Virus record (IMG/VR): IMGVR_UViG_3300036766_000194
Location: 1-64,000 of that record
Length of the DNA: 64,000 bases
Reading direction: 5' to 3' (one strand)
The translations under genes and the position numbers were made by a program. Below, in pieces: positions 5,720-63,917 of the stretch; the first letter of the stretch is position 1; every line of letters starts with the position of its first letter. Under the pieces are notes generated by a model. That model was not told the origin of the DNA and did no database searches. It worked only from the letters and a program-made list of their open reading frames with translations.

Positions 5720-6646
5720 GTGTCGGATAATCAGTTACAAAGACTGCTGGATTTTATGGTAGAGCGGGAGCATATCCGAAAACTCAAGGATTCCGGACAA
5801 CTGTGGCCTTGGTCAAACGATCTCATCTTTCAGAATTTCTTCATTAGCAATCTCCGCTGTGAAGACGACAAAACAACGCGATGGCTGAAAACTAACTGGC
5901 GTGACCCCCACGAGGACAATCCTGATCTTTGGTTCTCAGAAGTCATCTTTCGACGTGGTATAAATTTCCCAGCCACTGCAGCAGAATTAGGCTTTCCCGT
6001 CCCCTGGAATCCTGAGAAATTCAAGAAAGTCGTAGAGGCTCGCAAGGCTCAAAAGCTCCCTTGGTGTAATGGTCGAGCCTATAAGCTGATGGTCGGACAC
6101 AAGAAGTCTTCTGGGGGTTTTCACGGTTCCCAGGAAGACATGTTAGTTCACTATGTATTCAATCCCGTTTGGGAATTGCGTAAGGATCTTCGTGTTCAGG
6201 TGAAAGAATCTATCGCTCACTATTTTGATCGTCTATCAAAAGCTCCCTGGATGGGTGGTTGGTACAGTTACCGTGTGATTTGTGACTTGAAATACACAAA
6301 ATGGTTGCGCGGCGCAGACGACTGGTGGAAATTTGTGGTGCCCGGCCCCGGTAGTATCCGAGGATTAAATAGAATTTTAGGGAGGCCCATTAACCAAAAT
6401 CTTCTACTCGCGCCACCTGGTCAGACAGGTGTTCTCCCAAGATTCACCGCAGCCGAACGCATTGCTTGGATTGAAGAAGTCAATGTTTTGAGATTAATAG
6501 TGGCGGCTTTGGGGTTCAATGAACCAGAACTCACCGGAATCACCGCTCAAACAATGGGTGGGGCACTTTGTGAGTTTGACAAGTATGAACGGATTCGTTT
6601 AGGAGACGGTGGTAAGGTTCGACCCTATTGTCACCAATCGCTGTAG
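5720..6646 (+). CDS. aGPT-Pplase1 / 5-hmdU DNA kinase helical-domain family protein (copy 2)
   Basis: Paralog of 2126-3010 (NWRDPHE.NPDLWF, DLKYTKWLRGA.DWW.FVVPGPGS.RGLNR, LCEFDKY). GTG start after gggaacgct. Confidence 0.75.
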   Translation: MSDNQLQRLLDFMVEREHIRKLKDSGQLWPWSNDLIFQNFFISNLRCEDDKTTRWLKTNWRDPHEDNPDLWFSEVIFRRGINFPATAAELGFPVPWNPEKFKKVVEARKAQKLPWCNGRAYKLMVGHKKSSGGFHGSQEDMLVHYVFNPVWELRKDLRVQVKESIAHYFDRLSKAPWMGGWYSYRVICDLKYTKWLRGADDWWKFVVPGPGSIRGLNRILGRPINQNLLLAPPGQTGVLPRFTAAERIAWIEEVNVLRLIVAALGFNEPELTGITAQTMGGALCEFDKYERIRLGDGGKVRPYCHQSL

Positions 6647-7701: not shown

Positions 7702-8649
7702 ATGAATACTCCTCTCATTGACGCCTCCTATAAGAAGAAGCCTCATCACAGTGCTTTCTATTTTCAAAAGTTTTCCGAAATGAAAGATCTTCTTGAGAAG
7801 TCTCTCTCCTCCAAACACATATGGAATGTTGAGTATGAAGAAATTAAGCACTTCTTCTCCTCTGTTTGCGAAGGAGCCATGGATCAAGTTAGTCAACAGT
7901 TCAACGATGCCAATCGTGATCCTAAATTCACTCGCTGGCCCGACGATCCACGCAACCTAATCCCTTACTTTTTTGGTCCTCACCTTGCCGAATCTTATCT
8001 CAAGCGTCTTCTCAAGTGGCAGAAAAAAGAGAACTATCCGAAGATGCAAGAGATGATTGATCTCTACACAGAAGTTGCCGCCATCTATGACCAATTGAAA
8101 CAAGTCAAGCCTTTTATCGAAAAGGGTCGCAAACCGGACCCCAATGCTCCTCCTCCTGATCTTACTCACACGGGTCAGTGTGGAATCTGTATGCGCGTCA
8201 TCAAATTGGGTCCGGGAAATTTTATGGTAGCTCATGGATTTCAAATTAGTGGAGGTTACGGACACTATTTTGGTTATCGCCAAGGAAACTGCTTTGGAGT
8301 TAAGTACCAACCGCTGGAACTTTCCAACAAGGCCAATATAGCATTTAAGAAGAACTTGGAAGGCCAACTTAAATCCAATGAAGAACATCTCTCCGATTTG
8401 AAGGCTGGTCATCCTTCTTTGCTTTGGGAAGGCTATAAGCAAAACAAGATTGTTAAGGAATGGACTACAGACACCGATCCTCGTTATGCGAAACTGCATT
8501 CAGACTCCATACGAAATACGGAGCGGGATATCAAATATCTCAAGGATTATATACAAGATCAAGAGAGAATCATAACGAATTGGGTGGCGACGCCGCTCAA
8601 GCACGGCGGGCACAGCGCAAAAGTTTTGTCTTTTCTTAAAAAGAATTAG
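7702..8649 (+). CDS. Hypothetical phage protein with CxxC motif
   Basis: 315-aa ORF with CGICMR...HGF...GNCFGV segment. Confidence 0.75.
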   Translation: MNTPLIDASYKKKPHHSAFYFQKFSEMKDLLEKSLSSKHIWNVEYEEIKHFFSSVCEGAMDQVSQQFNDANRDPKFTRWPDDPRNLIPYFFGPHLAESYLKRLLKWQKKENYPKMQEMIDLYTEVAAIYDQLKQVKPFIEKGRKPDPNAPPPDLTHTGQCGICMRVIKLGPGNFMVAHGFQISGGYGHYFGYRQGNCFGVKYQPLELSNKANIAFKKNLEGQLKSNEEHLSDLKAGHPSLLWEGYKQNKIVKEWTTDTDPRYAKLHSDSIRNTERDIKYLKDYIQDQERIITNWVATPLKHGGHSAKVLSFLKKN

Positions 8650-8720
8650 CTTTTCTAGAAATCCACACGTAGAATATCTTTAGAAAAGCGATAATGAATT
8701 TGTGATTTGAACTTTTTCTG

Positions 8721-8728
8721 AGTATTAT
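8721..8728 (+). promoter_or_regulatory. -10-like element (AGTATTAT) 14 nt before the RNA/tRNA operon
   Basis: Same 14-nt spacing to a gene or RNA start as at 14097, 19358, 33445, 38540 and 59165. Confidence 0.5.
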
Positions 8729-8835: not shown

Positions 8836-8911
8836 GGGTGTGTAGCTCATCTGGGAGAGCGTCTCGCTTGCACCGAGAAGGCGGCAGGTTCAAGTCCTGT
8901 CACATCCACCA
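8836..8911 (+). tRNA. tRNA-Ala(TGC)
   Basis: Cloverleaf, tctcg-cttgcac-cgaga anticodon arm, TTC T-loop, encoded CCA. Confidence 0.95.
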
Positions 8912-8920
8912 AAAGTTTTT

Positions 8921-9270
8921 GCTTCCTGAGGCCGAAAGGCTTTTGGAAGCTCAGTGAAACTTGATTCCCGTACCAGGATCCGCGTCTGGTGAGTTAATCT
9001 GTTCAAGGGAATCCCACTTTTAGTCAGGTGGAGAACGGATGAAGTTGGGGATGTAGTCTGATGTCGTAAGATGTTGGGGAACACCATCGGGGGAGGTACC
9101 GCAAGGTACTTCCCTCGGCCAAAACGAGATTACTATGAAGACGATCACCAACTCGAACCGTTTCACCAAAGGAACGGTAGGAGTGTTTACGGGGATCGTC
9201 GTCGTCACCTTCGGTGGCGAAGATACCAAGGGTATTGAGGGGTAATACCCTCGCTACCCGGACCTACCCA
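8921..9270 (+). ncRNA. Unassigned ~350-nt multi-hairpin RNA between tRNA-Ala and tRNA-Val
   Basis: Stems gcttcc/ggaagc, gattccc/gggaatc, gtac-cgcaag-gtac, gacgatc/gatcgtc, cacc-ttc-ggtg, gggtatt/aataccc. No credible ORF. Confidence 0.55.
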
Positions 9271-9286
9271 AACAAATTTAACGCAT

Positions 9287-9362
9287 TAGCCTGTTAGCTC
9301 ATCGGTCAGAGCGTCCGGTTTACACCCGGAATAGGGGGGTTCAATTCCCTCACGGGCTACCA
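9287..9362 (+). tRNA. tRNA-Val(TAC)
   Basis: tccgg-tttacac-ccgga arm, CCA end. Confidence 0.93.
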
Positions 9363-9400
9363 AGTTTTTGGAGTTTACTGTGGTTTAGTTTAGAAAGGAG

Positions 9401-9436
9401 TAAACTGGGGTAAACTGGGATAAACTGGAGTAAACT
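9401..9436 (+). repeat. Four TAAACT units at 10-bp period
   Basis: taaactgggg taaactggga taaactggag taaact. Confidence 0.9.
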
Positions 9437-9479
9437 CAGTAGCTTGAGCAGGTATGGCGGTACCAAGTTTTTAGAGTTT

Positions 9480-9570: not shown

Positions 9571-9641
9571 TGGGTCGTAGCTTAATGGTAGAGCAGCGGC
9601 GTTAAGCCGCTGGTGCGAGGTTCGACTCCTCGCCGACTGAA
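9571..9641 (+). pseudogene. Degenerate tRNA-Asn-derived gene (loop CGTTAAG)
   Basis: Good D and T arms. Anticodon loop lacks U33, acceptor stem is mismatched, no CCA. Confidence 0.65.
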
Positions 9642-10068: not shown

Positions 10069-10617
10069 ATGAATGTCTGGTTGATTCCGGATACCCATTT
10101 CAACCCGAACGGGATTGAAACGTATTGCATCCGGCCAGAAGGATATGGTGAGCGCATTCAAAAGTTGTGGCGCAACACCGTAAAGCCGGAAGACACGGTT
10201 ATCCACCTTGGTGACGTTATCATAGGGGGATATGACAAGGCCAAGGAAATCTTGGACAGTCTGCCGGGGAACAAGATTCTCGTCATGGGAAACCATGACT
10301 GGAGTAAGTCGGCAACCTGGTGGATGCGTAACGGTTTTTCGTTCGCTTGTCACGGAATGCTTTGGGGACGTGTTTGGTTGAGTCATTACCCGGTTGATTT
10401 TTTGCCACAGTACGCAAAGATCAACATTCACGGGCACTGTCACATCAACCGTCGTTCTTGGGCAGGCTTGAATCCGTTTAACAAGCTGTTCTGTCTTGAA
10501 TATGGGCTAGGTGGAAACGTAGCAAGCGCCTACAGTCCTGTCAAGCTGGAAAAGTTCGTGGATTCGAAGAAGATTACGGAATTGGGTGGTGATTACAAGC
10601 ATCCTCTTCCGTGGTAG
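10069..10617 (+). CDS. Calcineurin-like metallophosphoesterase
   Basis: DTHF, HLGD, GNHD, HGHCH motifs. Confidence 0.9.
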   Translation: MNVWLIPDTHFNPNGIETYCIRPEGYGERIQKLWRNTVKPEDTVIHLGDVIIGGYDKAKEILDSLPGNKILVMGNHDWSKSATWWMRNGFSFACHGMLWGRVWLSHYPVDFLPQYAKINIHGHCHINRRSWAGLNPFNKLFCLEYGLGGNVASAYSPVKLEKFVDSKKITELGGDYKHPLPW

Positions 10618-15165: not shown

Positions 15166-17934
15166 ATGTCTACTTCGGACAAACTCGTTACAATTAAGAC
15201 GGAGCCACTTAGCTTCGTTAAGAATTTGTCCGTAGAATATTCCCCCAATATTGAAGATCATTTTCCGTTTCCTACCGTTCGTGAAGCTCAGCGTCGTGCT
15301 ATGTCTGCTATTGTTCGCGCTAAGGAAGAGGGAAAGAAGTTTGTAATCATAGAAGCCCCTACGGGTATAGGAAAATGTCTAGGCCGGGGCACCCTAGTTT
15401 TGATGTTTGATGGATCTTTGCGGGAAGTTGAGGGTCTTCAAATCGGGGATCAGTTGATGGGACCAGATTCTAAACCCAGAACTATTTTATCTTTGACGCA
15501 AGGCACAGGTGAAATGTTTGAGATTTCTTCCGACACCAAAAAGAAAACGTCTCATTTTGAGTCCTATGTAGTGAACGGAGACCATGTCCTGGCATTGAAA
15601 TATTCTGGAGAGATAAGTCAAGGGCAGAGTTCCGACCTAGATACGGTTTATCATAGAAAATTTGTGATTGGGGATCACTTAGAACTTTCAGTCAGTGATT
15701 ATATTCAAAAATGCAAATGGTTCAAGCATTGTGTGAAAGGTTACAAAGTGGGTGTAGAATTTCCTGAAAGTCCCCTTACCGTAGACCCCTATTTTCTTGG
15801 TCTTTGGTTGGGTGACGGCTCCAGTGATTCTTCCGAAATTACGACCGCCGATGAAGAGATTAAGAAATACATTTACGAGGTCGCGGCTCAGTATGGACTA
15901 GGCGTGACCGTTGACGATAGGAAAGACGAAAGTGACTGCCCTTCTTATCACATATCGCGGGGAAGAAACAACAAAGAAGAAAATGGTCTCCTGATACAAA
16001 TGCAAAATTTGAAGGTGATTAACAACAAACATATACCCATGAACTACCTCATAAATTCGCGCTCAAATCGCTTGAAATTACTAGCCGGGTTGGTGGATTC
16101 AGATGGCTATGTTTCGAGCGGAACTTACGAGATAGCCACTAAGTGGGCGCATTTAGCAAATCAAATTAGGTACCTAGCCCGCTCTTTGGGTTTTGCAGCA
16201 CAATTTGAGATGAAGTGGGTTAAAAATCAATCAGAAAAGCGATTTAAGTCTTATGTACTCACTTTTTACGGCACCGGGCTAGAGGAACTCCCCGTTTTGC
16301 TTCCCCGTAAAAAGTCTCAGTCTAGGAAACAAATCAAGGATGCACTACGTTCGGGTCTGAACGTAGTTTCAAAAGGACTTGGAGACTATTTCGGTTTTAC
16401 CTTAAATGGTGACGGACTGTTTCTTCTAGGTGACTTTACGGTCACTCATAATAGCGGTATCGCTATTGCTGCCGCTTCCTGGGCTAAGACCTGGAATGCT
16501 CCAGGTTATGAACCAGGTGCTTATATTCTCACCCCTCAAAAAATTCTTGCTCAACAGTATATGAATGATTTTGCAAACTTTGGTTTGCTTGAACTTCGTG
16601 GTAAGGCTAATTATCACTGCGACACTTTTGACACCGATTGCGACAGCGGCGCGTTGATGAACGATTCTACTGAGGGTGGAGACAACCGTACCACCTGCCC
16701 CAGTTGTCCCTATAAACTAGCAAAGAAGGCTTTCATCGCCAACTCTCTGGGCACTACCAATTTTGCCTACTATTTGAATGAAACTCAGTATGCTGGGCAA
16801 CTTCCTCGTCGCAATATGTTGGTTCTGGATGAAGGACACAATACCGAGAGTAACCTACTTAATTTTGCCGACACGGTTATTTCTAAGTGGCGCATGAAGG
16901 AAATCGGACTTGGCGCTCTTCCTGTTTTCAAACCGGGTGAAAATATTGCCTGCCGCGATTGGCTGTTTCATACCTTCATCCCCCAATGCCAGCAGTTTAT
17001 GTCGGAATTGGAAAATCAGGTTGACGAAGCCAAGTTTGAAGGTCGTAAGGAAGATGCTTTGAAGTTGGTTAAGAAACTGGATAATTACGATAAATATATC
17101 TGCCGTCTGAATCGTTTTATGAATTCTGACGATCTCTCCAATTGGCTCTGCTTCACTACTGAAGACGATGAGAAGCGGGACACCCAGGCTGAGATTCTTA
17201 TCAAGCCTCTCACTGCTACTCTTGTGGCTGATGAGATTCTCTTCCGTAAGGCTTCCATGATTGTAATCATGAGCGCGACCATTCTTGACATAGCGACTTT
17301 TATGCGCAGCCTGGGGATAAAGGATGAGGAAGCCGTTGTTCTTACCCTCCCCAGCGAATTCCCAGTTGAAAATCGTCCCATCTATTACAAGCCCGTGGGC
17401 AAAATGAATTGGAACGAACGTGAAGCTACCATGCCCAGAATGCTAAAGTTCATTGAGAAGATTATGGATAAATATGAAGGCAAAAAGGGCATCATTCATA
17501 CTCACAGCTATGCCTTTAACAAGGCTATTACCGCTTACCTGCGTAACACTAAACATGCTAATAGGATTATCACACATACAGGGATACCTGGGTCTCGTGA
17601 TGCCGCTGTTGCGGAGCATTTTGAGCGTCCTGATGCCACGGTTTTGATTTCGCCCAGTCTGAATGAGGGATTGGATCTTAAAGAAGATCTGGCGCGGTTT
17701 TGCATCTTGATCAAGGTACCGTTTGCCTTCTTAGATCCCTATACTAAGGCTAGAATGCGTCGCGATCCTGCTTGGTATACTCTTCAAGCATCGCTTACTA
17801 TGATTCAAGCTACGGGGAGAATTATTCGTACCAAGGATGACAAGGGTCATTGCTTTATCCTTGACGCCGACTTTTCCAGTTTCCTTAATAGGGCAAGGCT
17901 ACCAACGTGGTGGACGGATGCCCTTGTTTTTTAG
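15166..17934 (+). CDS. DinG/Rad3-like SF2 helicase with intein
   Basis: EAPTGIGK|SG Walker A split by an intein. DEGH, SAT, HTHSY, EGLD and QATGRIIR motifs. Cys cluster. Confidence 0.9.
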   Translation: MSTSDKLVTIKTEPLSFVKNLSVEYSPNIEDHFPFPTVREAQRRAMSAIVRAKEEGKKFVIIEAPTGIGKCLGRGTLVLMFDGSLREVEGLQIGDQLMGPDSKPRTILSLTQGTGEMFEISSDTKKKTSHFESYVVNGDHVLALKYSGEISQGQSSDLDTVYHRKFVIGDHLELSVSDYIQKCKWFKHCVKGYKVGVEFPESPLTVDPYFLGLWLGDGSSDSSEITTADEEIKKYIYEVAAQYGLGVTVDDRKDESDCPSYHISRGRNNKEENGLLIQMQNLKVINNKHIPMNYLINSRSNRLKLLAGLVDSDGYVSSGTYEIATKWAHLANQIRYLARSLGFAAQFEMKWVKNQSEKRFKSYVLTFYGTGLEELPVLLPRKKSQSRKQIKDALRSGLNVVSKGLGDYFGFTLNGDGLFLLGDFTVTHNSGIAIAAASWAKTWNAPGYEPGAYILTPQKILAQQYMNDFANFGLLELRGKANYHCDTFDTDCDSGALMNDSTEGGDNRTTCPSCPYKLAKKAFIANSLGTTNFAYYLNETQYAGQLPRRNMLVLDEGHNTESNLLNFADTVISKWRMKEIGLGALPVFKPGENIACRDWLFHTFIPQCQQFMSELENQVDEAKFEGRKEDALKLVKKLDNYDKYICRLNRFMNSDDLSNWLCFTTEDDEKRDTQAEILIKPLTATLVADEILFRKASMIVIMSATILDIATFMRSLGIKDEEAVVLTLPSEFPVENRPIYYKPVGKMNWNEREATMPRMLKFIEKIMDKYEGKKGIIHTHSYAFNKAITAYLRNTKHANRIITHTGIPGSRDAAVAEHFERPDATVLISPSLNEGLDLKEDLARFCILIKVPFAFLDPYTKARMRRDPAWYTLQASLTMIQATGRIIRTKDDKGHCFILDADFSSFLNRARLPTWWTDALVF
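15376..16452 (+). mobile_element. Class 1 intein with LAGLIDADG endonuclease (359 aa)
   Basis: C1 (CLGRGT), block B NGDH, LGLWLGDG and LAGLVDSDG, ends THN followed by Ser+1. Confidence 0.92.
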
Positions 17935-30603: not shown

Positions 30604-31953
30604 GTGGCCGTGGACACAGAAACTGGTATGAAATTTTCTCCCAATAGGATTGATACCAACAAACCTCTCAAAGAGGGAGATAGAGTGACTGCGCCACTCG
30701 AAGTCATTAAGCAGTACGTGGAGAATCAGAAAATGTCTGACCAGAAGCGTGGCATAAAAGGACGAGTGTATTTGACACCAGAAGAGGTGTCTCCCGCTGC
30801 GCAAGCATTCGGCTGCGACCGCTTCGTCTATAACCACCTTTTGGAATTTGAGCAGAATAGGTATGCCACAGACCAGACCAAAACAAACAAGAAAGACAGG
30901 AACATCGAATTCAATCGTCTCAAGCAAGAATTTCCTTGGCTGTATGATGTCAACGCTCAGATGCTTCAGCAGTCCACGAGGAAACTGGATACAGCGTGGG
31001 ACAATTTCTTCGCCACCTGCAAAACAACGAAACATTGGAGACGCCCGAAGTTCAAAAAGAAAACGAACAGGCAGTCAGCACGGTTCACCAAAGGTTCATT
31101 CAAGTTCGAGAACGGCGTGCTCACCCTCTCCAAAATTGGAGACATCTCAATACCTTGGTATCGCCGAGTAAAAGGCGAGCCATCATCTGTCGTTCTTAGC
31201 ATGACGCCTTCGGGTCGATATTATGCGTCGTTTCAAGTCGAGCAGCCGTTGCGTGTAGTCGGCTCCGCAATCAATCAGGTTGCCTCAATTGACATCAACA
31301 CCAAGACTTTCAATTTCTTTAACGGCAGGACGTATTCGCATGTTGCTCTGCCCCGCCCGTTGCTCGGTGCTCTGTCGCGGCTCCGCACGGCACAGAAGCA
31401 CCTGAGCCGCTGCACCAAAGGCTCCAAGAATCGGGAGAAAGCCCGTCTCAAAGTCGCCAAGATTCACCAGCGGGTGTCAGACATCCGCACTGATTTTCTC
31501 CAGAAGTTAAGCACTCAACTTGTTCACGAGAACCAAGTGATAGTAGTTGAAACGCTTCGCACCAAGAACATGCTCAAGAATCGCCATCTGTCTCGTGCAA
31601 TTTCAGATGCAGGCTTCGGCGGCTTCCTCCGCATGTTGGAATACAAGTGCAAGTGGTATGGCAGAATGCTCGTCAAAGTAAACACGTTCTTCCCATCATC
31701 AAAGTTGTGCTGCATTTGTCGAGAGAAGAATGCAGACCTCAAACTCCAAGACCGCTGGCAGTGCCCGAATTGCAAGACGGAACACCAGCGAGACGAGAAT
31801 GCTGTCGTAAACATTTTCGTAGAGGGTTTGAGAATCTTAGCCGAGGGACGCTCGGTATCAGCCTGCGGAGGCACAGCAAGACCTAATCGCAAGATTAGGC
31901 GTGTGCCTGTGAAGCAGGAAACATCGTTGGAGACGAGCAGCAATGCTGCTTAG
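30604..31953 (+). CDS. tnpB: TnpB (IS200/IS605 RNA-guided nuclease) with N-terminal extension containing a TnpA tail
   Basis: FGCDRFVYN, P.FKKK, RuvC SID / VVETL / RDENA, Zn finger CCIC...CPNC. Typical TnpB body starts near ATG 30733. Confidence 0.92.
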   Translation: MAVDTETGMKFSPNRIDTNKPLKEGDRVTAPLEVIKQYVENQKMSDQKRGIKGRVYLTPEEVSPAAQAFGCDRFVYNHLLEFEQNRYATDQTKTNKKDRNIEFNRLKQEFPWLYDVNAQMLQQSTRKLDTAWDNFFATCKTTKHWRRPKFKKKTNRQSARFTKGSFKFENGVLTLSKIGDISIPWYRRVKGEPSSVVLSMTPSGRYYASFQVEQPLRVVGSAINQVASIDINTKTFNFFNGRTYSHVALPRPLLGALSRLRTAQKHLSRCTKGSKNREKARLKVAKIHQRVSDIRTDFLQKLSTQLVHENQVIVVETLRTKNMLKNRHLSRAISDAGFGGFLRMLEYKCKWYGRMLVKVNTFFPSSKLCCICREKNADLKLQDRWQCPNCKTEHQRDENAVVNIFVEGLRILAEGRSVSACGGTARPNRKIRRVPVKQETSLETSSNAA

Positions 31954-41517: not shown

Positions 41518-41891
41518 TGTGATGGACTGGACTGTCGCTGGCGACTGCTAGAATGAGTTGCGGGAGGAAGTTCGGGGCAGCATCAGAGCAACGTGCCAGG
41601 TAATAACTGGGCATCGGAGAAATCCGATGACGGAAAGTGGAACAGAAAATAACCGCCACGGCGCAAGCCGGGGTAAGGGTGCAAAGGTAGGGTAAGAGCC
41701 TACCAGCACGGCGGTAACGTCGTGGCTGCTAAACCCCACGTGCTGCAATGCCAAATAAGGATGGGATGATCTGCTCGATCGTTTTTCTCATCCGGGTAGG
41801 CAGCTTGAGATCATAGGTGACTATGATCCTAGACGAATGACAGTCACTCAGCATGGGCTGATGACAGAACCCCGGCTATAGGTTCATCACA
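41518..41891 (+). ncRNA. rnpB: RNase P RNA (bacterial type A-like)
   Basis: P1 tgtgatggac/gttcatcaca. P4 halves GAGGAAGTTCGGGG and ACAGAACCCCGGCTA. Also GAAAGTGGAACAGAAA, GGTAAGAGC, GCTAAACCC and AGACGAATG conserved segments. Confidence 0.93.
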
Positions 41892-41892
41892 A

Positions 41893-42036
41893 ATGAAAAA
41901 TAGTCACAAACGTGAGTCTAAACAATTGGGAATAAATGTCCAAACGGCAACCAATCGTTTGGTTAGAATGCTGCTGTTCAAATTCGCCCTCGAAACAAAG
42001 AGGGAGAATTGGAATAAATTCCCAACGATTTGCTGA
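41893..42036 (+). pseudogene. Truncated HNH endonuclease-type N-terminus
   Basis: SKQLGINVQTATNRLVRMLLFKF resembles the start of phage HNH genes. ORF stops at 47 aa before any HNH motif. Confidence 0.45.
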
Positions 42037-42188: not shown

Positions 42189-42299
42189 CGCGGGGTGGAG
42201 CAGCCAGGTAGCTCGTTTGCCTCACGGAGAGGAATCCTAACGGGTTTCTCTTCGACCATAAGCAAAAGGTCGTCCGTTCAAATCGGACCCCCGCACCCA
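42189..42299 (+). tRNA. Initiator-type tRNA-fMet(CAT) interrupted by a 34-nt insert in the anticodon loop
   Basis: cgcggggtggagcagccaggtagctcg 5' half with C1:A72 mismatch. Removing 42223-42256 restores tttgc-ctcataa-gcaaa. CCA end. Confidence 0.9.
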
Positions 42300-42493: not shown

Positions 42494-42886
42494 ATGATGA
42501 CACATGCCGACTACGAAGCGCAACGCGCACTGCTCTATGACGACTACGAGGCGCAATGCGCACCGCTTTATGCCGACCACAAGGCGCAACTCGCACTGCT
42601 CGATGACGACCACTACGAAGCGAAACACGCACTCGATGACGACTACGAGACGCAACTCGCACTGCTCGATGACGACTACAAGGCGCAACGCGCACTCGAT
42701 GACGACTACGAGACGCAACTCGCACTGCTCGATGACGACTACGAAGCGAAACACGCACTGCTCTATGACGACTACAAGGCGCAACGCGCACCGATCGATG
42801 CCGACTACGAAGCGAAACGCGCACTGCTCGATGACGACTACGAGGCGCAACGATCAGTAATCGAAAATCCGTTCAAAGTTTCATGA
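42494..42886 (+). CDS. Acidic 11-aa (33-bp) tandem-repeat protein
   Basis: RBS aaggag. About 11 units of DYEAQRALLDD with point variants and 10/12-aa indel units. Confidence 0.8.
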   Translation: MMTHADYEAQRALLYDDYEAQCAPLYADHKAQLALLDDDHYEAKHALDDDYETQLALLDDDYKAQRALDDDYETQLALLDDDYEAKHALLYDDYKAQRAPIDADYEAKRALLDDDYEAQRSVIENPFKVS

Positions 42887-59541: not shown

Positions 59542-59697
59542 AAATCATAGATCTATCAGGACAACAATAAAGGCTACACAAAAGAAAACTGCACTGTTTG
59601 CTGTAAAACTTGCAACTATGCCAAAGGGAATCGTTATACCTTTGAAGAATGGGTTGCAATGACAAAAGCACTTCGAAAAGTAAGATCCAAGTTTTGA
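59538..59697 (+). pseudogene. Internally deleted HNH endonuclease remnant
   Basis: MKIIDLSGQ start joined out of frame to DNNKGYTKENCTVCCKTCNYAKG. Confidence 0.65.
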
Positions 59698-59738
59698 GCA
59701 GTATAAAGGAAGTCAGGATTTCAGGACCTTTGCAAATC

Positions 59739-62700
59739 ATGTCGAAAACCTACGGAACACTAGAATACGACAAGAAGAAACGGGTCTTCCTGATTGAGTG
59801 TGCTCCTCATGTTGCTATTAGGGTCAAGCGCGTATTCGCTAAGATAAACACTTACGAGTATGGTAAGCTGAAGTTATCTGCTACTCCTGAGAACGCCAGG
59901 GATCTTGAATGGTTCCTGGAACGCTATCCCATGGAAGTAAAGCACCCAGAAATTCTTAAGGAACTCGCCACCCAACAAAAAGAACGCGCCATCCTAGTTG
60001 AACAACTTTTGAATGGATATTCTGCTCGCCAATTCCCCTTGAAACTTCCAGCCCGAGACTATCAATCCTTGGCTGCTAATATGTGGTTAGTAGCAGGAGG
60101 ACTCCTTCTAGCGGACGATGTGGGTCTCGGGAAGGCTCAGACCCTTTCCGCTAAGATCCTCACTCCTACGGGATGGACTACCATGGGAGAAATTAAAGTG
60201 GGTGACGCCGTAGTCGATCCCGACGGCGGCATAGGGTATGTAGAGGGGGTGTATCCTCAAGGAGAGAAGGAAATCTTCCTCATGACAACTTCTGATGGGG
60301 TGGAAGTTGAGTGTTGTGACGAGCACTTGTGGTGGGTCCAAACTCACAATGACCGAATGCGTAATAGTTCGCGTGTTGTACCTTTGAAGGATTTTCGTAA
60401 TGATTTGTTTGGAAAGGAACACGATAGTTGCTGGCACGCCAAATGGTTTATTCCAGTAGTTCAACCTCTTGTTATGCAAAGAATTGAGTTTTCCTTTCCT
60501 CCCTACCTTTTGGGATGTCTTTTAGGAGACGGTTCCCTTAGGAACAGCATACAAACGTTGACCTGTTCGGAGTCTCAGATTATAGAAAAGATAAAGAAAT
60601 CACTTCCTTTGGATTTGCGGGTTAAGAATGCTAGCAACCCCATAGAATGGTCTTTTCCTAGAAAAATCTATAGCAACAAGCCGCACCCCTTTACAGTCCA
60701 ACTGCGCAAATGGGGTCTTTGGACAAAATACTCCTACGAAAAGTGGATCCCTCTCGATTGTTTCTTTTGGTCAGTGGAACATCGTATTGAACTTCTTCGT
60801 GGCTTAATGGATACCGATGGAGAATGTGGCAAATCCTATGGTGCGTATTTCTCTTCTACCTCTAAGCAACTCGCTGATGGATTGGCGGACTTAGTTCGTT
60901 CCTTGGGGGGACTAGCTAAAGTTAAGTATGTAGGGAAGGGAAACTATCGAAAGGAAGATGGTACTGTAAAGGTGTGTAGGGATTCTTGGAATGTCTCTGT
61001 TCAAACTTTATTTGTGCCTTTTCATTTGAAAAGAAAAACTGAACGTTGGCACAAGCCTAATATGGCTAGAGCGATAAAGAAAGTGGAGTCAATTGGTTAC
61101 AAAATCGCCAAATGTATCAAAGTTTCTACTAAGCGTCATTTATACATTACGGATGGATATCTTCCAACTCACAACACTTGCACAGCCATCGCAGGACTCA
61201 CGGACTCTAGGCTCCTCCCTTCCTTAATCGTATGTCCCACCCACTTACCCCCTCAATGGGAGAATGAGGTTCATAAGTTCACCGATCTTACGGTCCATCG
61301 TCTTCGTCAAGCCACTCCTTATGACATCACCAAATATACCAACGGTATATTCCCCGACGTGATAATTTCCAACTATCATAAATTGTCAGGATGGGCTGAG
61401 ACAATTGCTCCCTGCGTCAAGAGCATCATTTTCGATGAAGTTCAAGACTTACGTCATACAGGTTCTAACAAATATATGGCAGCTAAACACATAGCGGATT
61501 CATGTGAGTGGCGTCTGGGCCTCAGTGTGGGACCAGATTCTTTGTTGCTATTACGGGGTGGCCCCTTTGGGGGTGGGTGGCAGGGGACTATAGAACAGGC
61601 TTATCAGATGGTTTTAACTTCATCCAGGGTGATCTTGGAAGGTGGGTATAGTCTCCTACCTGTGAAACACTCGAATATAGAAAGTCGCGGTTGGGAACAA
61701 GATGGCTTTTGTTGGAAAACAGTTAAGACATTTATACGGCATAAGTGTGACAAGCCAGTCCGAGAAATAGAAGTAAGAGGTTCTCGTCTTCTCCTCACCG
61801 ATGATCACTCCTTGTTCAAAATTACTAAGGGGAAGATAGCATGTGTATCCAGTGAGCAGTTGAAACTTCATGACTGTTTGCCTTTGGATAATGGAAAGAA
61901 TTGGGAAATCGGGGCAAATAAAGAAGTCGTGTTAGATATTGCTTCTATCATAGATCCTCATAAAAAGGTTCAAGTCTTGGTGGACATTTCTGGTTTAACT
62001 CGTAAGGAGGTAGGTGTAAATCCTCAAAACTGGTATAATTTTAAGAAAGAAAGGAAATTTGGACCAAGAATACCGCTTAGATATTTTCTAACCCATCGTC
62101 GTAAATTACCAGCACCGCAAGGTTTATATTTTAGCCAAACTAGAGGCAAGGCTAGAGTGATTGGGAATCTGACTTTGCGGCTTAGTAATTGGGCCTATGT
62201 TTTGGGATTCTTTTTAGGGGCTGGTTGGCTTAATAGGGATAGCCGAGGTGTTATTACGAGTGTCAGCTTTTCTGTGGATGCACCTCATTACAAAAAATTG
62301 TGCACTGCCTTGGGAGCCATTAAAGAAACACCCCTGCGTATCCGAGAACGCTTCAGCACAGTTGCAATGGTTGAGATTGAGTGCGATAACAAATTCTTCG
62401 CAGAAATTTTGGCTTACGTTTTCAAGGGGGCAAAGAAATGTTGGGAAAAAGAACTTCCTACAGAATGGACAACTACTTGGTCCAGGAAAGCTCGTGAACA
62501 GCTATTGGAAGGACTTAGAGATTCAGACGGCGTAGCAGCTGGTTCTAATCCAACTACTAGTAGTGCCTATACAACCACTTCTCTGGCTTTAGCAAAATCA
62601 ATTCTTCTCTTGCTGAGGAGTCTAGGTATATCGGGGAGTTACAGTGAACACTCTCCGAGTCTTGGGGGGTGGGTTAAGGAAAAGGACGGTTCATTACGTC

Positions 62701-63917
62701 AGATACAAGGTAAAAGAATTTCCTACATAATTGGGTGGAGTGTTGGAACGGGTCATTGGGGTTCGGCTTTGCCCTATAAATCCCCCGAATTGTGGAATCA
62801 AGCCCCAATACATAGGATTAAGGATGTCGTTCCGCCATCACATGTATACGATTTAGAAATGGAAGGTCATCCTTCTTTTTGCCTTGAAGGAATTGGTATG
62901 CTAGGAAAAAATTCCGCGACTCCAATTTACAACTATGGAGGAGAGATGTTTAACGTTCTAGATGTTCTCTATCCAGGTTGCCTAGGAACTTGGGATGAAT
63001 TTAGCCGCGAGTGGGTTGCTTATGCTTTTGGGGATAAACCCAAGATAAAGGATCCTAAAGCGTTTGGTGTTTATACTCGTGAAGCTGGACTCATGCTACG
63101 TCGGACCCGTATAGAGGTACGCCGCGAATTGCCTGAGGTTACGGTCGTCCCACACAGCATTGATTGTGACACGGCCATCCTTGACAAGATGAAGGGCAAG
63201 GCTATTGAGCTTGCCAAACTGATCCTTGCGCAGAAGCAAGATTTTCGTGGGCAAAAGATGCAAGCTGCTGGAGAATTTGATTTGCGTATGCGTCAAGCTA
63301 CAGGTATTGCCAAGGCTCCCTATGTTTGCGAATTTGTAAAATTCTTGATACAAGAGAGTAACGAACCTATTGTATTGTTCGGATGGCACAGGGAAGTTTA
63401 CGAGATCTATCTAGAAAAATTGAAAGAGTTTAATCCTGTGATGTATACAGGGAGTGAGACAGCTGTACAAAAGGAAGAGTCTAAGCAGAAATTTATCAAA
63501 GGTCAGAGTAAGGTTATGATAATCAGCCTCCGCTCTGGGGCGGGGCTGGATGGTTTACAGGATATTTGTCACATCGCGGTATTCGGAGAGTTAGACTGGT
63601 CAAATTCTGTTCATACTCAGTGTGTGGGTCGTATTCATAGAGATGGTCAGGATGAACCTGTCATCGCCTATTATTTGCTGAGTACTGATGGCTGTGATCC
63701 TATTATGTGCGATGTCTTAGGGATCAAACGGCAGCAATCTGAAGGCATATTAAATCCGTTAGGTGAGTTCGTAGGAGAAAACATAATACGGGAGCAGTAT
63801 ATAAGGGACCTAGCCGCCGATTTTTTGACGAAACAGGGAGTTGACGTTGAGAAGATTGAAAAACCCAAAGAAATCTCTGAAACACAAGTTTCCTCAGATA
63901 GCCCAGGAATGGCATGA
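59739..63917 (+). CDS. SNF2-family helicase with two inteins
   Basis: LADDVGLGK|T, FDEVQ, LGL|SATP, GAGLDGL, Q.VGRIHR.GQ. Start placed at ATG 59739. Confidence 0.9.
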   Translation: MSKTYGTLEYDKKKRVFLIECAPHVAIRVKRVFAKINTYEYGKLKLSATPENARDLEWFLERYPMEVKHPEILKELATQQKERAILVEQLLNGYSARQFPLKLPARDYQSLAANMWLVAGGLLLADDVGLGKAQTLSAKILTPTGWTTMGEIKVGDAVVDPDGGIGYVEGVYPQGEKEIFLMTTSDGVEVECCDEHLWWVQTHNDRMRNSSRVVPLKDFRNDLFGKEHDSCWHAKWFIPVVQPLVMQRIEFSFPPYLLGCLLGDGSLRNSIQTLTCSESQIIEKIKKSLPLDLRVKNASNPIEWSFPRKIYSNKPHPFTVQLRKWGLWTKYSYEKWIPLDCFFWSVEHRIELLRGLMDTDGECGKSYGAYFSSTSKQLADGLADLVRSLGGLAKVKYVGKGNYRKEDGTVKVCRDSWNVSVQTLFVPFHLKRKTERWHKPNMARAIKKVESIGYKIAKCIKVSTKRHLYITDGYLPTHNTCTAIAGLTDSRLLPSLIVCPTHLPPQWENEVHKFTDLTVHRLRQATPYDITKYTNGIFPDVIISNYHKLSGWAETIAPCVKSIIFDEVQDLRHTGSNKYMAAKHIADSCEWRLGLSVGPDSLLLLRGGPFGGGWQGTIEQAYQMVLTSSRVILEGGYSLLPVKHSNIESRGWEQDGFCWKTVKTFIRHKCDKPVREIEVRGSRLLLTDDHSLFKITKGKIACVSSEQLKLHDCLPLDNGKNWEIGANKEVVLDIASIIDPHKKVQVLVDISGLTRKEVGVNPQNWYNFKKERKFGPRIPLRYFLTHRRKLPAPQGLYFSQTRGKARVIGNLTLRLSNWAYVLGFFLGAGWLNRDSRGVITSVSFSVDAPHYKKLCTALGAIKETPLRIRERFSTVAMVEIECDNKFFAEILAYVFKGAKKCWEKELPTEWTTTWSRKAREQLLEGLRDSDGVAAGSNPTTSSAYTTTSLALAKSILLLLRSLGISGSYSEHSPSLGGWVKEKDGSLRQIQGKRISYIIGWSVGTGHWGSALPYKSPELWNQAPIHRIKDVVPPSHVYDLEMEGHPSFCLEGIGMLGKNSATPIYNYGGEMFNVLDVLYPGCLGTWDEFSREWVAYAFGDKPKIKDPKAFGVYTREAGLMLRRTRIEVRRELPEVTVVPHSIDCDTAILDKMKGKAIELAKLILAQKQDFRGQKMQAAGEFDLRMRQATGIAKAPYVCEFVKFLIQESNEPIVLFGWHREVYEIYLEKLKEFNPVMYTGSETAVQKEESKQKFIKGQSKVMIISLRSGAGLDGLQDICHIAVFGELDWSNSVHTQCVGRIHRDGQDEPVIAYYLLSTDGCDPIMCDVLGIKRQQSEGILNPLGEFVGENIIREQYIRDLAADFLTKQGVDVEKIEKPKEISETQVSSDSPGMA
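60135..61175 (+). mobile_element. Class 3 intein (Ala1) with LAGLIDADG endonuclease (347 aa)
   Basis: Starts AQTL. WCT signature: EHLW, block F KCI, PTHN then Thr+1. LGCLLGDG and LRGLMDTDG. Confidence 0.88.
61524..62912 (+). mobile_element. Ser1 intein with degenerate LAGLIDADG domain (463 aa)
   Basis: Starts SVGPDS, block B TDDH, block F VYDLE, ends GKN then Ser+1. Motifs LGFFLGAG and LEGLRDSDG. Confidence 0.85.

What the first reader, a model, noticed from the sequence alone, without database searches (positions are those of the whole stretch)
8921..9270. ~350-nt unassigned structured RNA between tRNA-Ala and tRNA-Val
Seen: a dense series of hairpins, several with stable short loops, a long-range gtagtct/agattac pairing, and no plausible ORF. 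Flanking tRNAs would release it as a discrete RNA through RNase P and 3' processing. Established: large ncRNAs such as GOLLD and ROOL occur beside phage tRNAs. I cannot match this sequence to any known class.
Basis: partly seen in the sequence, partly recalled or inferred. Interest (0 to 1): 0.7.

Follow-up and report, generated by a model that had tools for sequence, protein, structure and literature searches.

The report
tRNA-end mimic hairpins plus micro-gene
The gap between two tRNA genes of this 300-kb phage is not one big RNA: it holds a row of 34-base hairpins built like the amino-acid-accepting end of a tRNA (13 pairs, a four-base loop, then NCCA), followed by a conserved 36-codon gene, an arrangement I could not find described.

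Summary
The hairpins are real: MFE -146.8 kcal/mol, z -4.8 on the + strand, and no Rfam match even at E<=10. The interval is a composite, not a single ~350-nt RNA.

Three syntenic homologues from related uncultured phages (L031, L038, partial L039) show two parts.

1. Tandem 34-nt modules: a 13-bp stem, a GNRA or UMAC tetraloop, then discriminator+CCA, spaced 1-2 nt apart. L031 and L038 have five each. The window has three (8921-8954, 9053-9086, 9088-9121) around a derived middle. Across 14 modules 91% of cells pair and all 13 pairs show double changes.

2. A micro-ORF at 9135-9245 (36 aa; 32-45 aa in relatives). Start and TAA stop are kept, indels are in frame, and divergent pairs differ most at third positions.

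One more module interrupts the anticodon loop of an initiator-like tRNA at 42225-42258.

Most likely (inferred) the modules are natural hairpin-CCA substrates of RNase P, whose RNA this phage encodes. They would punctuate the tRNA precursor, release the micro-gene mRNA, or act as acceptor-end decoys. No expression data exist.

The parts
8640..8728 (+). Likely promoter region of the tRNA array. It holds a copy of the phage's recurrent motif (TTAGCTTTTCT..N..TAGAATAT, 8640-8677) and a sigma-70-like site (TTGTGA-17-TATTAT, 8700-8728).
   Evidence: The motif TAACCTTTTT-N~14-TAGAATA recurs upstream of many genes in the genome. Neither is shown to be functional.
8836..8911 (+). tRNA-Ala(UGC) with encoded CCA; the 5' neighbour of the element.
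   Evidence: ARAGORN; Rfam tRNA, 62.1 bits.
8921..8954 (+). Module H1: 13-position stem (12 pairs) + GAAA loop. Its tail is UCAG, so the CCA is lost in this copy. Orthologous to H1 of L031 and L038, which end in ACCA.
   Evidence: R1 model hit, 28.8 bits. Alignments. By direct reading, five positions carry compensatory double changes against L031 H1.
8963..9016 (+). Derived hairpin in place of modules H2/H3: GAUUCCC/GGGAAUC plus ACCAG/CUGGU, with a 9-nt loop and a 16-nt bulge, followed directly by CCA (9014-9016).
   Evidence: Direct reading. Not matched by model R1. The alignment with L031 and L038 is poor here.
9053..9086 (+). Module H4: 13-position stem (11 pairs, four of them G-U) + GUAA loop + ACCA.
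   Evidence: Scan; R1 hit, 28.3 bits.
9088..9121 (+). Module H5: perfect 13-bp stem + GCAA loop + GCCA. Orthologous to H5 of L031 and L038.
   Evidence: Scan; R1 hit, 38.9 bits; alignment A7.
9122..9134 (+). A/U-rich, predicted unpaired linker before the start codon, with a weak GAGA purine patch.
   Evidence: Centroid structures; direct reading.
9135..9245 (+). Micro-ORF of 36 codons (MKTITNSNRFTKGTVGVFTGIVVVTFGGEDTKGIEG) with a TAA stop.
   Evidence: ORF list. Family members: P0063, P0065, P0067, P0071, P0064, P0066. Codon analysis.
9230..9259 (+). Conserved 3' hairpin (GGGUA..UACCC around GAGGG..CCCUC). The TAA stop lies in its loop.
   Evidence: RNAalifold on four homologues: 10 pairs, one compensatory.
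9288..9362 (+). tRNA-Val(UAC); the 3' neighbour. RNase P cleavage here would set the 3' end of the micro-ORF RNA.
   Evidence: ARAGORN; Rfam, 62.3 bits. The cleavage is inferred.
42225..42258 (+). A further 34-nt module (13 bp, UAAC loop, ACCA) inside the anticodon loop of an initiator-like tRNA gene (42189-42299).
   Evidence: R1 hit, 33.6 bits. ARAGORN finds a tRNA with a 34-nt intron. After removal of exactly this module it calls tRNA-Met(CAT).
41519..41894 (+). Phage-encoded RNase P RNA, class A, with the L15 GGU that binds substrate CCA. The presumed processing enzyme for the modules.
   Evidence: Rfam RF00010, 255.4 bits, full length. The sequence CCGGGUAGGC was read.

Best explanation
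The interval is a composite segment of the polycistronic tRNA-array transcript. It is not one ncRNA.

The 5' two-thirds is a chain of tRNA acceptor/T-arm mimics. Each is a 13-bp helix closed by a GNRA-type tetraloop, followed by a discriminator base and CCA, packed 1-2 nt apart like the tRNAs around them.

The 3' third is a 36-codon gene for an orphan, probably beta-strand-rich peptide. Its stop codon sits in a conserved hairpin.

Proposed mechanism (inferred):
1. RNase P, whose RNA subunit the phage encodes with an intact CCA-binding loop, cuts at the 5' side of every module and of tRNA-Val.
2. The 1-2-nt trailers are trimmed back to CCA, as for tRNAs.
3. The precursor is thereby resolved into tRNA-Ala, several ~34-nt minihelix-CCA RNAs, and a ~200-nt micro-gene mRNA that starts with the stable H5 hairpin.

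On this view the modules work as processing punctuation, comparable to plant-mitochondrial t-elements, which frees and stabilises the small mRNA. The released minihelices may also occupy enzymes that bind tRNA 3' ends.
For: Shown:
- Homologues lie in the same slot (tRNA-Ala(tgc) / element / tRNA-Val(tac), upstream of a Metallophos gene) in L031, L038 and L039. nhmmer gives E 5e-18 to L031.
- L031 and L038 each carry five modules of identical architecture.
- On the gapless alignment of 14 modules, 91.2% of cells pair, against 57% in shuffles and 37-54% when the partner is slid. All 13 pairs have double changes, and the covariation score is 0.947 against 0.26, with 0/500 shuffles as high.
- 30 of 166 paired cells are G-U, which places the structure on the + strand RNA.
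- Genome-wide, only 7 of 438 13-4-13 hairpins are followed by NCCA, as chance predicts. In the three elements 11 of 12 are.
- Model R1 finds only these copies in the 300-kb genome. It finds none in 30 other loci or five related phage genomes.
- Micro-ORF: the ATG and TAA are kept in five lineages, lengths are 32/32/36/44/45 codons, and all indels are in frame.
- Differences by codon position are 7/9/15 (window vs L039), 12/13/24 (window vs L033) and 16/13/28 (L039 vs L033).
- The 3 SNPs among L032-L036 are all synonymous.
- The phage has class-A RNase P RNA, a CCA-adding-type nucleotidyltransferase and RNA-ligase-family genes.

From the literature: E. coli RNase P RNA cleaves acceptor/T-stem hairpin-loop model substrates at the canonical site. 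Tetraloop variants are cleaved less well, with shifted sites (PMC11143913).
Against: - No RNA-seq covers the element. The one RNA-labelled run only matched the tRNA-Ala of another organism. Transcription, cleavage and translation are therefore all inferred.
- Tetraloop-capped hairpins are poorer RNase P substrates than T-loop hairpins (PMC11143913).
- Five tandem modules are more than punctuation needs.
- Module H1 of the window has lost its CCA, and the window's middle modules are degenerate. Selection on individual copies is therefore loose.
- Among the closest homologues the ORF shows no third-position relaxation: position identities are 0.81/0.75/0.72, against 0.79/0.85/0.50 for the neighbouring Metallophos gene. 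Part of its conservation may therefore act at RNA level.
- The Shine-Dalgarno signal is weak, the peptide has no Pfam or Atlas relative, and AlphaFold confidence is low (pLDDT 52).
Confidence: 0.5

Rival explanations
1. Decoy or sponge. The released minihelix-CCA RNAs are the functional product. They would titrate host factors that recognise tRNA acceptor ends (nucleotidyltransferase toxins of the MenT/AbiE type, acceptor-stem nucleases, 3' exonucleases). This would protect the phage's own tRNA supply.
For: - Shape is selected, not sequence, and copies are multiple and tandem.
- The genome is heavily invested in tRNA supply and repair: 46 tRNAs, tmRNA, RNase P RNA, a CCA-adding-type enzyme and RNA ligases.
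- Toxins acting on tRNA acceptor ends exist (PMC7450476, listed).
Against: - No target is identified.
- The modules are confined to one small lineage.
- Copy number drifts, and one window copy lacks CCA.
- No expression data exist.
Confidence: 0.17
2. Selfish or relict hairpin elements. On this view the 34-nt unit is a small mobile or duplicating palindromic module that lands in tRNA-rich DNA, and its structure serves its own spread rather than the phage.
For: - One copy interrupts an otherwise intact tRNA anticodon loop.
- Copy number and flanking insertions differ between relatives.
- The window's array is partly degenerate.
Against: - Copies within one genome are only about 50-60% alike, so spread is not recent.
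- Orthologous copies keep pairing through many compensatory changes, which indicates long-term selection on the RNA fold.
- G-U pairs argue against a DNA-level hairpin.
- No transposase or nuclease is associated.
Confidence: 0.13
3. The 3' block is an RNA element (sRNA or processing signal) and the open frame is incidental or secondary.
For: - The window, L031, L038 and L039 share runs of 16-30 identical bases in the frame's 5' end and around the stop.
- There is no third-position relaxation.
- Conserved helices are predicted (GACGAU/AUCGUC, CGUUUC/GGAACG, the 3' hairpin).
- Other frames of this G+C-rich stretch are also fairly open.
Against: - All indels are in frame, and start and stop are conserved.
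- In the more distant L033 group the peptide motif R[FI]T[KR][GD]T..VVVT..GIE persists, while the nucleotides and the CGUUUC/GGAACG hairpin do not.
- Divergent pairs differ about twice as often at third positions.
- 3 of 3 SNPs are synonymous.
Confidence: 0.15
4. One large structured ncRNA of a new class, released whole by tRNA processing.
For: Strong folding z-scores in the window and both full homologues. No known family matches.
Against: - No conserved long-range helix spans the hairpin half.
- L038 tolerates insertions of 78 and 110 nt and L031 lacks 26 nt of the window's middle.
- The units are self-contained.
- The conserved core is a coding frame.
Confidence: 0.05

Closest known systems
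Synthetic acceptor/T-stem hairpin-loop ('minihelix', pATSer-type) model substrates of bacterial RNase P
   Same: A single helix of about 12-13 stacked pairs with a 3' NCCA. Such hairpins are cleaved by M1 RNA at the canonical site (PMC11143913).
   Different: These modules are natural, genome-encoded, tandem and capped by GNRA/UMAC tetraloops instead of a 7-nt T-loop. Cleavage has not been tested.
Non-tRNA RNAs processed from phage tRNA clusters or by RNase P (T4 species 1/2 stable RNAs, phi80 M3 RNA, P1/P7 C4 RNA). Recalled from my own knowledge, not tested here.
   Same: Phage-encoded RNAs that are not tRNAs, are embedded in or processed like tRNA precursors, and mostly have unknown function.
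   Different: No sequence or structural relation was tested. Those are single RNAs of 80-140 nt, not arrays of 34-nt hairpin-CCA units.
t-elements of plant mitochondria (tRNA-like processing signals). From my own knowledge.
   Same: tRNA-like structures placed next to mRNAs, so that RNase P and tRNA 3' processing define the mRNA ends.
   Different: t-elements are cloverleaf-like and organellar. Here the mimic is reduced to the acceptor arm and is repeated.
RNase P RNA class A (RF00010), which occupies the array in distant relatives
   Same: Same genomic niche. In L004, L008, L010, L014 and L015 a ~350-400-nt structured RNA flanked by tRNAs lies in the array downstream of the homologous 315-aa gene.
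   Different: The target gives no RF00010 score at E<=10 and lacks the P4 strands. The phage's real P RNA is at 41519-41894.
GOLLD / ROOL large phage-associated ncRNAs
   Same: Found next to tRNAs in phages; rich in GNRA loops.
   Different: No Rfam match, half their size or less, no global fold, and it contains a coding frame.

Membership tests
Any Rfam 15 family (incl. GOLLD, ROOL, HEARO, raiA, tmRNA, SRP, 6S, group I intron) | Covariance-model score at or near the gathering threshold | tested here: not met
   No hit in 8912-9287 at gathering score or at E<=10 apart from a chance-level RAGATH-16 match on the - strand (17.9 bits against a threshold of 65.6). None in the homologous elements of L031, L038 or L039 at E<=1.
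Bacterial RNase P RNA class A | Full-length RF00010 match with conserved P4 strands (GAGGAAAGUCC / ACAGAA..GGCUUA) | tested here: not met
   No RF00010 hit in the interval. The motifs are absent on reading. The genuine copy at 41519-41894 scores 255 bits.
tRNA minihelix / RNase P hairpin substrate | Continuous helix equal in length to the stacked acceptor + T stems (12 bp, plus the stacked T54-A58 layer) | tested here: met
   13 positions in all 14 modules, 91% paired.
tRNA minihelix / RNase P hairpin substrate | Single-stranded 3' NCCA directly after the helix | tested here: met
   13 of 14 modules have NCCA; window H1 has UCAG. The background is 7 of 438 hairpins.
tRNA minihelix / RNase P hairpin substrate | 7-nt T-loop (UUCRANY) | tested here: not met
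   The loops are GNRA (8), UMAC (4), UAAA (1) and GAAA-type tetraloops.
tRNA minihelix / RNase P hairpin substrate | Cleavage by RNase P at the 5' end of the helix | not testable with these tools
   No RNA reads cover the element.
Protein-coding gene (micro-ORF) | Frame, start and stop conserved through indels | tested here: met
   32-45 codons in five lineages. ATG and TAA are kept and indels are multiples of three. Two distant variants lose the stop and read on (P0064, P0066).
Protein-coding gene (micro-ORF) | Excess of third-position and synonymous change | tested here: inconclusive
   Present in divergent pairs (7/9/15, 12/13/24, 16/13/28) and in 3 of 3 SNPs. Absent among the closest homologues.
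Leader-peptide transcription attenuator | Intrinsic terminator and alternative antiterminator after the short ORF | tested here: not met
   No terminator-like site between 8912 and 9287. The 3' hairpin has no U-tract.
Archaeal/eukaryal-type tRNA intron (for the 42225-42258 insertion) | Bulge-helix-bulge motif at the exon-intron junctions | tested here: not met
   By reading, the insert is a 13-bp hairpin flanked by 4 and 7 unpaired bases. There are no 3-nt bulges around a 4-bp helix.

The most novel reading that the evidence does not exclude
The 34-nt minihelix-NCCA unit is a new kind of RNase P-defined intervening RNA. In the array it is cut out as free acceptor-arm mimics. In the initiator-like tRNA at 42189-42299 it acts as an intron, removed by RNase P-type cleavage plus end trimming, and the halves are rejoined by one of the phage's RNA ligases. 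That would be a tRNA splicing route not known in bacteria or phages, and the excised minihelices would double as acceptor-end decoys.
Probability: 0.08. Interest if true: 0.9.

Novelty: new variant of a known kind. Interest (0 to 1): 0.58.

Why it matters
If the modules are cut and matured like tRNAs, this would be the first natural array of acceptor-arm minihelices that I could find. Until now such hairpins have been laboratory model substrates or figures in origin-of-tRNA arguments. Here they sit in a phage that also carries its own RNase P RNA, tmRNA, CCA-adding-type enzyme and RNA ligases.

It would show a new way for phages to punctuate tRNA operons and express a tiny gene from them. It might also show a new way to shield tRNA 3' ends from host attack.

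The copy inside a tRNA anticodon loop raises a testable question: does a non-group-I, non-BHB tRNA intron exist in a bacterial virus?

It also illustrates that a strongly folding intergenic RNA can hide a conserved micro-gene.

Tried and rejected
**Searches for relatives that found nothing**
- BLAST of the element against GenBank phages: no match.
- The 315-aa upstream protein alone in IMG/VR: nothing.
- A RecA-like marker: one remote locus only.
- Exact-pattern scans with conserved blocks in viral contigs and genome contigs: nothing.
- Relatives at 33-36% identity of the upstream protein (L004, L008-L016, L018-L030) have tRNA arrays but no homologue by nhmmer or BLAST, by model R1 or by the peptide profile.
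- Two closer contigs (those of P0002 and P0003) had no retrievable DNA.

**Ideas tested and rejected**
- Divergent RNase P paralogue. This was suggested because relatives carry RNase P RNA in the array. It was rejected because there is no CM signal and no P4.
- Split tRNA with a group I intron. Rejected on reading: no D or T arm at the ends.
- The gap L024:8376-8772 turned out to be an HNH endonuclease gene.
- Leader-peptide attenuation. The peptide is rich in V/I/F/G/E/D, the amino acids of the downstream tRNAs. But the enrichment is weak (21 of 36 against about 44% expected) and there is no terminator.
- G3:U70 alanine identity in the modules. Present only in window H5 and not conserved.

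**Runs with no usable result**
- Sequencing runs gave only near-identical DNA contigs, and an RNA-labelled run matched only a foreign tRNA-Ala.
- For the peptide: Pfam, the exhaustive representative search (family members only) and the Atlas found no relatives. AlphaFold gave pLDDT 52, so no fold search was run.
- The 315-aa upstream protein and several neighbours have no Pfam family.

Full report
**Context.** The window is the first 64 kb of a 299,875-bp phage record with direct terminal repeats, recovered from sediment metagenomes. The genome carries 46 tRNA genes in clusters sorted by amino acid and a permuted tmRNA. Inside the window it also carries a full-length class-A RNase P RNA at 41519-41894, scoring 255 bits. 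The finding lies between tRNA-Ala(UGC) 8836-8911 and tRNA-Val(UAC) 9288-9362. This is the start of an array of Ala, Val, Ile, a UUA-anticodon tRNA, Phe, Val, Gly, then a Metallophos gene, then Glu, Asp, Glu.

**Checking the observation.** The + strand of 8912-9287 folds to -146.8 kcal/mol, against -114.8 +/- 6.6 for dinucleotide shuffles (z -4.84, 0/100 as good). The - strand is weaker, z -2.85. The loops are GAAA, GUAA, GCAA and UUCG-type. No Rfam family matches at gathering score or at E<=10 on a 2.1-kb slice. So the hairpins and the lack of a known class are confirmed.

**Finding relatives.**
- Direct DNA searches found nothing.
- The protein upstream (7702-8649) has homologues. Relatives at 33-36% identity are 170-460-kb phages whose arrays downstream of that gene lack the element. 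Many of them carry an RNase P RNA between tRNA-Cys and tRNA-Gly.
- This prompted the idea of a decayed RNase P paralogue, but nothing in the target supports it.
- The downstream Metallophos gene (10069-10617) led to closer relatives.
- L031 (Metallophos 64.5% identical by global alignment; 69% by BLASTP) has tRNA-Ala(tgc), a 336-nt gap, then tRNA-Val(tac). nhmmer aligns the 3' half of the target to that gap at E 5e-18.
- A peptide profile then found L038, with a 515-nt gap in the same slot.
- A cluster member gave L039, whose contig starts inside the element.
- L031 and L038 fold even better than the window, with z -6.96 and -6.64.

**Anatomy, 5' part.** In L031 the MFE fold is five consecutive hairpins. 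Reading them shows one rule: a 13-position stem, a four-base loop, then N-C-C-A, then 1-2 bases, then the next unit (386-419, 422-455, 457-490, 492-525, 527-560).

L038 has the same five units (598-631, 633-666, 669-702, 704-737, 739-772). It also has two unrelated hairpins upstream and a 110-nt insert downstream.

The window keeps H1 (8921-8954, tail UCAG instead of NCCA), H4 (9053-9086, ACCA) and H5 (9088-9121, GCCA). Between them, 8955-9052 holds a derived, bulged hairpin followed by CCA and a small hairpin.

The 14 units align without gaps. On that alignment:
- 91.2% of cells form standard pairs, against 57.0 +/- 2.7 when 3' partners are shuffled and 37-54% when they are slid by 1-3 columns.
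- All 13 pairs show changes on both sides.
- The covariation score is 0.947 against 0.26, with 0/500 shuffles as high.

The rows were chosen as hairpins, so the paired fraction is partly circular. The fixed 13-4-13-NCCA register and the compensatory changes between orthologous copies are not. For example, window H1 against L031 H1 has five double changes in 13 pairs.

About 18% of paired cells are G-U, so the fold belongs to the + strand RNA. The loops are GNRA or the GNRA-like UMAC, with an invariant A at loop position 3.

Background check: the genome has 438 hairpins of 13-4-13 form with at least 11 pairs on both strands. Seven are followed by NCCA, which is the chance rate of 1/64. In the three elements 11 of 12 are.

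A covariance model of the unit finds four copies in the 300-kb genome. It finds none in 30 other loci or in five related phage genomes of 88-463 kb. The unit is therefore specific to this small lineage.

Its supposed partner AGAUUAC (9127-9133) is the spacer before the start codon. L031 and L038 have nothing complementary at those places.

**Anatomy, 3' part.** The block that nhmmer aligned coincides with ORF 9135-9245 (36 codons). This ORF has a gene call on the record itself (P0063).

Homologous frames:

| Source | Length | Peptide |
|---|---|---|
| L031 576-674 | 32 aa | MRMTITNSTRFTTGTGEVRFIIVGEDTMGIGR |
| L038 891-989 | 32 aa | P0065 |
| L039 110-247 | 45 aa | MKTLTTNSNRFTKGTVSVCKGEIDVLFTSERFEGGIGVDTVGIGR |
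| P0067 | 32 aa | not shown |
| P0071 | 32 aa | not shown |
| L033 5715-5849 (more distant, Metallophos 56% identical) | 44 aa | directly upstream of tRNA-Val(tac) |

Evidence for coding:
- The ATG and the TAA are kept.
- Every length difference is a multiple of three.
- Differences by codon position are 7/9/15 (window vs L039), 12/13/24 (window vs L033) and 16/13/28 (L039 vs L033).
- The three SNPs among L032-L036 are all synonymous.
- The motif R[FI]T[KR][GD]T...VVVT...GIE survives in L033, where the nucleotides and the local CGUUUC/GGAACG hairpin do not.

Evidence of extra, nucleotide-level constraint:
- Among the close homologues the three codon positions are equally conserved (0.81/0.75/0.72). 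The Metallophos gene next door shows 0.79/0.85/0.50.
- 16-30-nt runs are identical across phages whose proteins are only 45-65% identical.
- Helices are predicted inside and after the frame. These include a conserved hairpin at 9230-9259 with the stop codon in its loop.

The homology of the L033 peptide rests on position and weak similarity (pairwise E 0.06), bridged by L039. I treat it as likely, not proven.

The peptide has no Pfam family. It has no relative beyond its own small family among 1.84 billion representatives and no Atlas neighbour. AlphaFold gives only a low-confidence four-strand model, pLDDT 52.

**A module inside a tRNA.** The fourth genomic hit of the module model, 42225-42258 (13/13 pairs, UAAC loop, ACCA), lies in the anticodon loop of an unannotated tRNA gene at 42189-42299. 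That gene has an initiator-type acceptor stem (C1 opposite A72, CGCGGGG).
- Removing exactly the module restores the loop CUCAUAA and a tRNA-Met(CAT) call.
- It is the only interrupted tRNA in the genome.
- The junctions do not form a bulge-helix-bulge.

This shows the unit is a discrete, portable 34-nt entity. Whether it is spliced out is unknown.

**How it most likely works.**

Shown: the architecture, its conservation by compensatory change, the NCCA tails, the coding signature, and the phage's own RNase P RNA. That RNA retains the L15 GGU which pairs with substrate CCA (read). The phage also has a CCA-adding-type nucleotidyltransferase and three RNA-ligase-family genes.

Established elsewhere: bacterial RNase P RNA cleaves hairpins made of acceptor stem + T stem + loop at the canonical site. 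Tetraloop versions are cleaved less efficiently (PMC11143913).

Inferred:
1. The array is transcribed from the promoter region at about 8640-8728.
2. RNase P cuts 5' of each module and of tRNA-Val.
3. Exonucleases trim the 1-2-nt trailers to CCA.
4. The products are tRNA-Ala, free ~34-nt minihelix-CCA RNAs, and a micro-gene mRNA that begins with the stable H5 hairpin and ends at 9287.

I rank the functions as follows:
- Processing punctuation and mRNA release or stabilisation first.
- Acceptor-end decoy second.
- Selfish or relict hairpin modules third.

These are not mutually exclusive. A single large ncRNA is now unlikely.

**Comparison with known things.** In working principle, the nearest are the laboratory minihelix substrates of RNase P, plant-mitochondrial t-elements, and the old, unexplained stable RNAs in the T4 tRNA cluster. 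The last two are from my own knowledge and were not tested here. It is not a member of any Rfam family, of RNase P RNA, of tmRNA, or of the attenuator class; the tests are listed in the membership table. Full-text searches for minihelix or CCA hairpins in phage tRNA arrays, and for phage-encoded RNase P RNA, found no description. That is absence in an open-access library, not proof of novelty.

**Verdict.** The element is real, conserved and without a known class. It is a modular array of tRNA-end mimics plus a micro-gene, not a 350-nt ribozyme-like RNA. Function is inferred only, and no expression data could be obtained. Interest is moderate to high, mainly for three reasons: the natural minihelix-NCCA modules, the copy inside a tRNA anticodon loop, and the RNase P-equipped phage they sit in.

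Noticed in passing
window 41519-41894; also L004:13264-13653, L008:10750-11124, L010:9232-9582, L014:9223-9573, L015:8940-9257: Full-length class-A RNase P RNA genes encoded by jumbo phages. In the relatives they sit between tRNA-Cys and tRNA-Gly inside the tRNA array (167-255 bits). Literature searches found no paper that names phage-encoded RNase P RNA.
   Followed up: partly
window 42189-42299 (insert 42225-42258): An initiator-like tRNA gene (C1 opposite A72), missed by default ARAGORN and Rfam. Its anticodon loop is interrupted by one 34-nt minihelix-ACCA module. Removing the module gives tRNA-Met(CAT). It is the only interrupted tRNA in the genome.
   Followed up: partly
window 9571-9641; L031:1502-1572; L039:1077-1145: A tRNA with anticodon UUA (would read UAA), with a weak Rfam score of 34.9 bits. 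Its counterparts in relatives have odd anticodon loops. Stop-codon-free ORF statistics gave no clear sign of recoding. The micro-ORF ends in TAA in all homologues.
   Followed up: no
window about 9395-9440: A tandem 9-nt repeat (GTAAACTGG-like, 4-5 copies) between tRNA-Val and tRNA-Ile. Public assemblies break here, depth is 4-7x higher, and one run shows a different copy arrangement.
   Followed up: no
window 8640-8677 and many sites genome-wide: A recurrent motif TAACCTTTTT-N~14-TAGAATA(T/C) a few bases upstream of start codons. It is probably a phage-specific promoter, and one copy precedes the tRNA array.
   Followed up: partly
window 30604-31953: A TnpB/IS605 OrfB-type gene (OrfB_IS605, Cas12f1-like TNB, HTH). 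Its omega RNA was not looked for.
   Followed up: no
window 15166-17934 and 59649-63917: Two helicase genes interrupted by inteins with LAGLIDADG homing-endonuclease domains. The SNF2-type gene appears to hold two.
   Followed up: no
window 5720-6646: A 5-hmdU DNA kinase homologue (PF18723, E 1e-23), which hints at hypermodified thymidine in the phage DNA.
   Followed up: no
window about 42494-42886: An ORF built of tandem ~36-nt repeats (DDYEAQ/KRALL-like units), directly downstream of the interrupted tRNA.
   Followed up: no
genome (outside the window) 234274-234654 (-), 115386-115745, 82198-82656, 84140-84574, 136882-137379: A permuted tmRNA, a CCA-adding/poly(A)-polymerase-family gene and three RNA_ligase-family genes. 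No RtcB was found.
   Followed up: partly
L024:8376-8772 (and L023): In a distant relative, the gap after tRNA-Ala(tgc) is filled by a small HNH endonuclease gene. Inter-tRNA gaps in this clade are used by mobile genes as well.
   Followed up: partly
L008:8861-9781: A 921-nt gap between tRNA-Ala(tgc) and tRNA-Val(tac), the same flanks as the target, in a 456-kb relative. It has no convincing ORF, no module and no peptide match. Its content is unexplained.
   Followed up: partly
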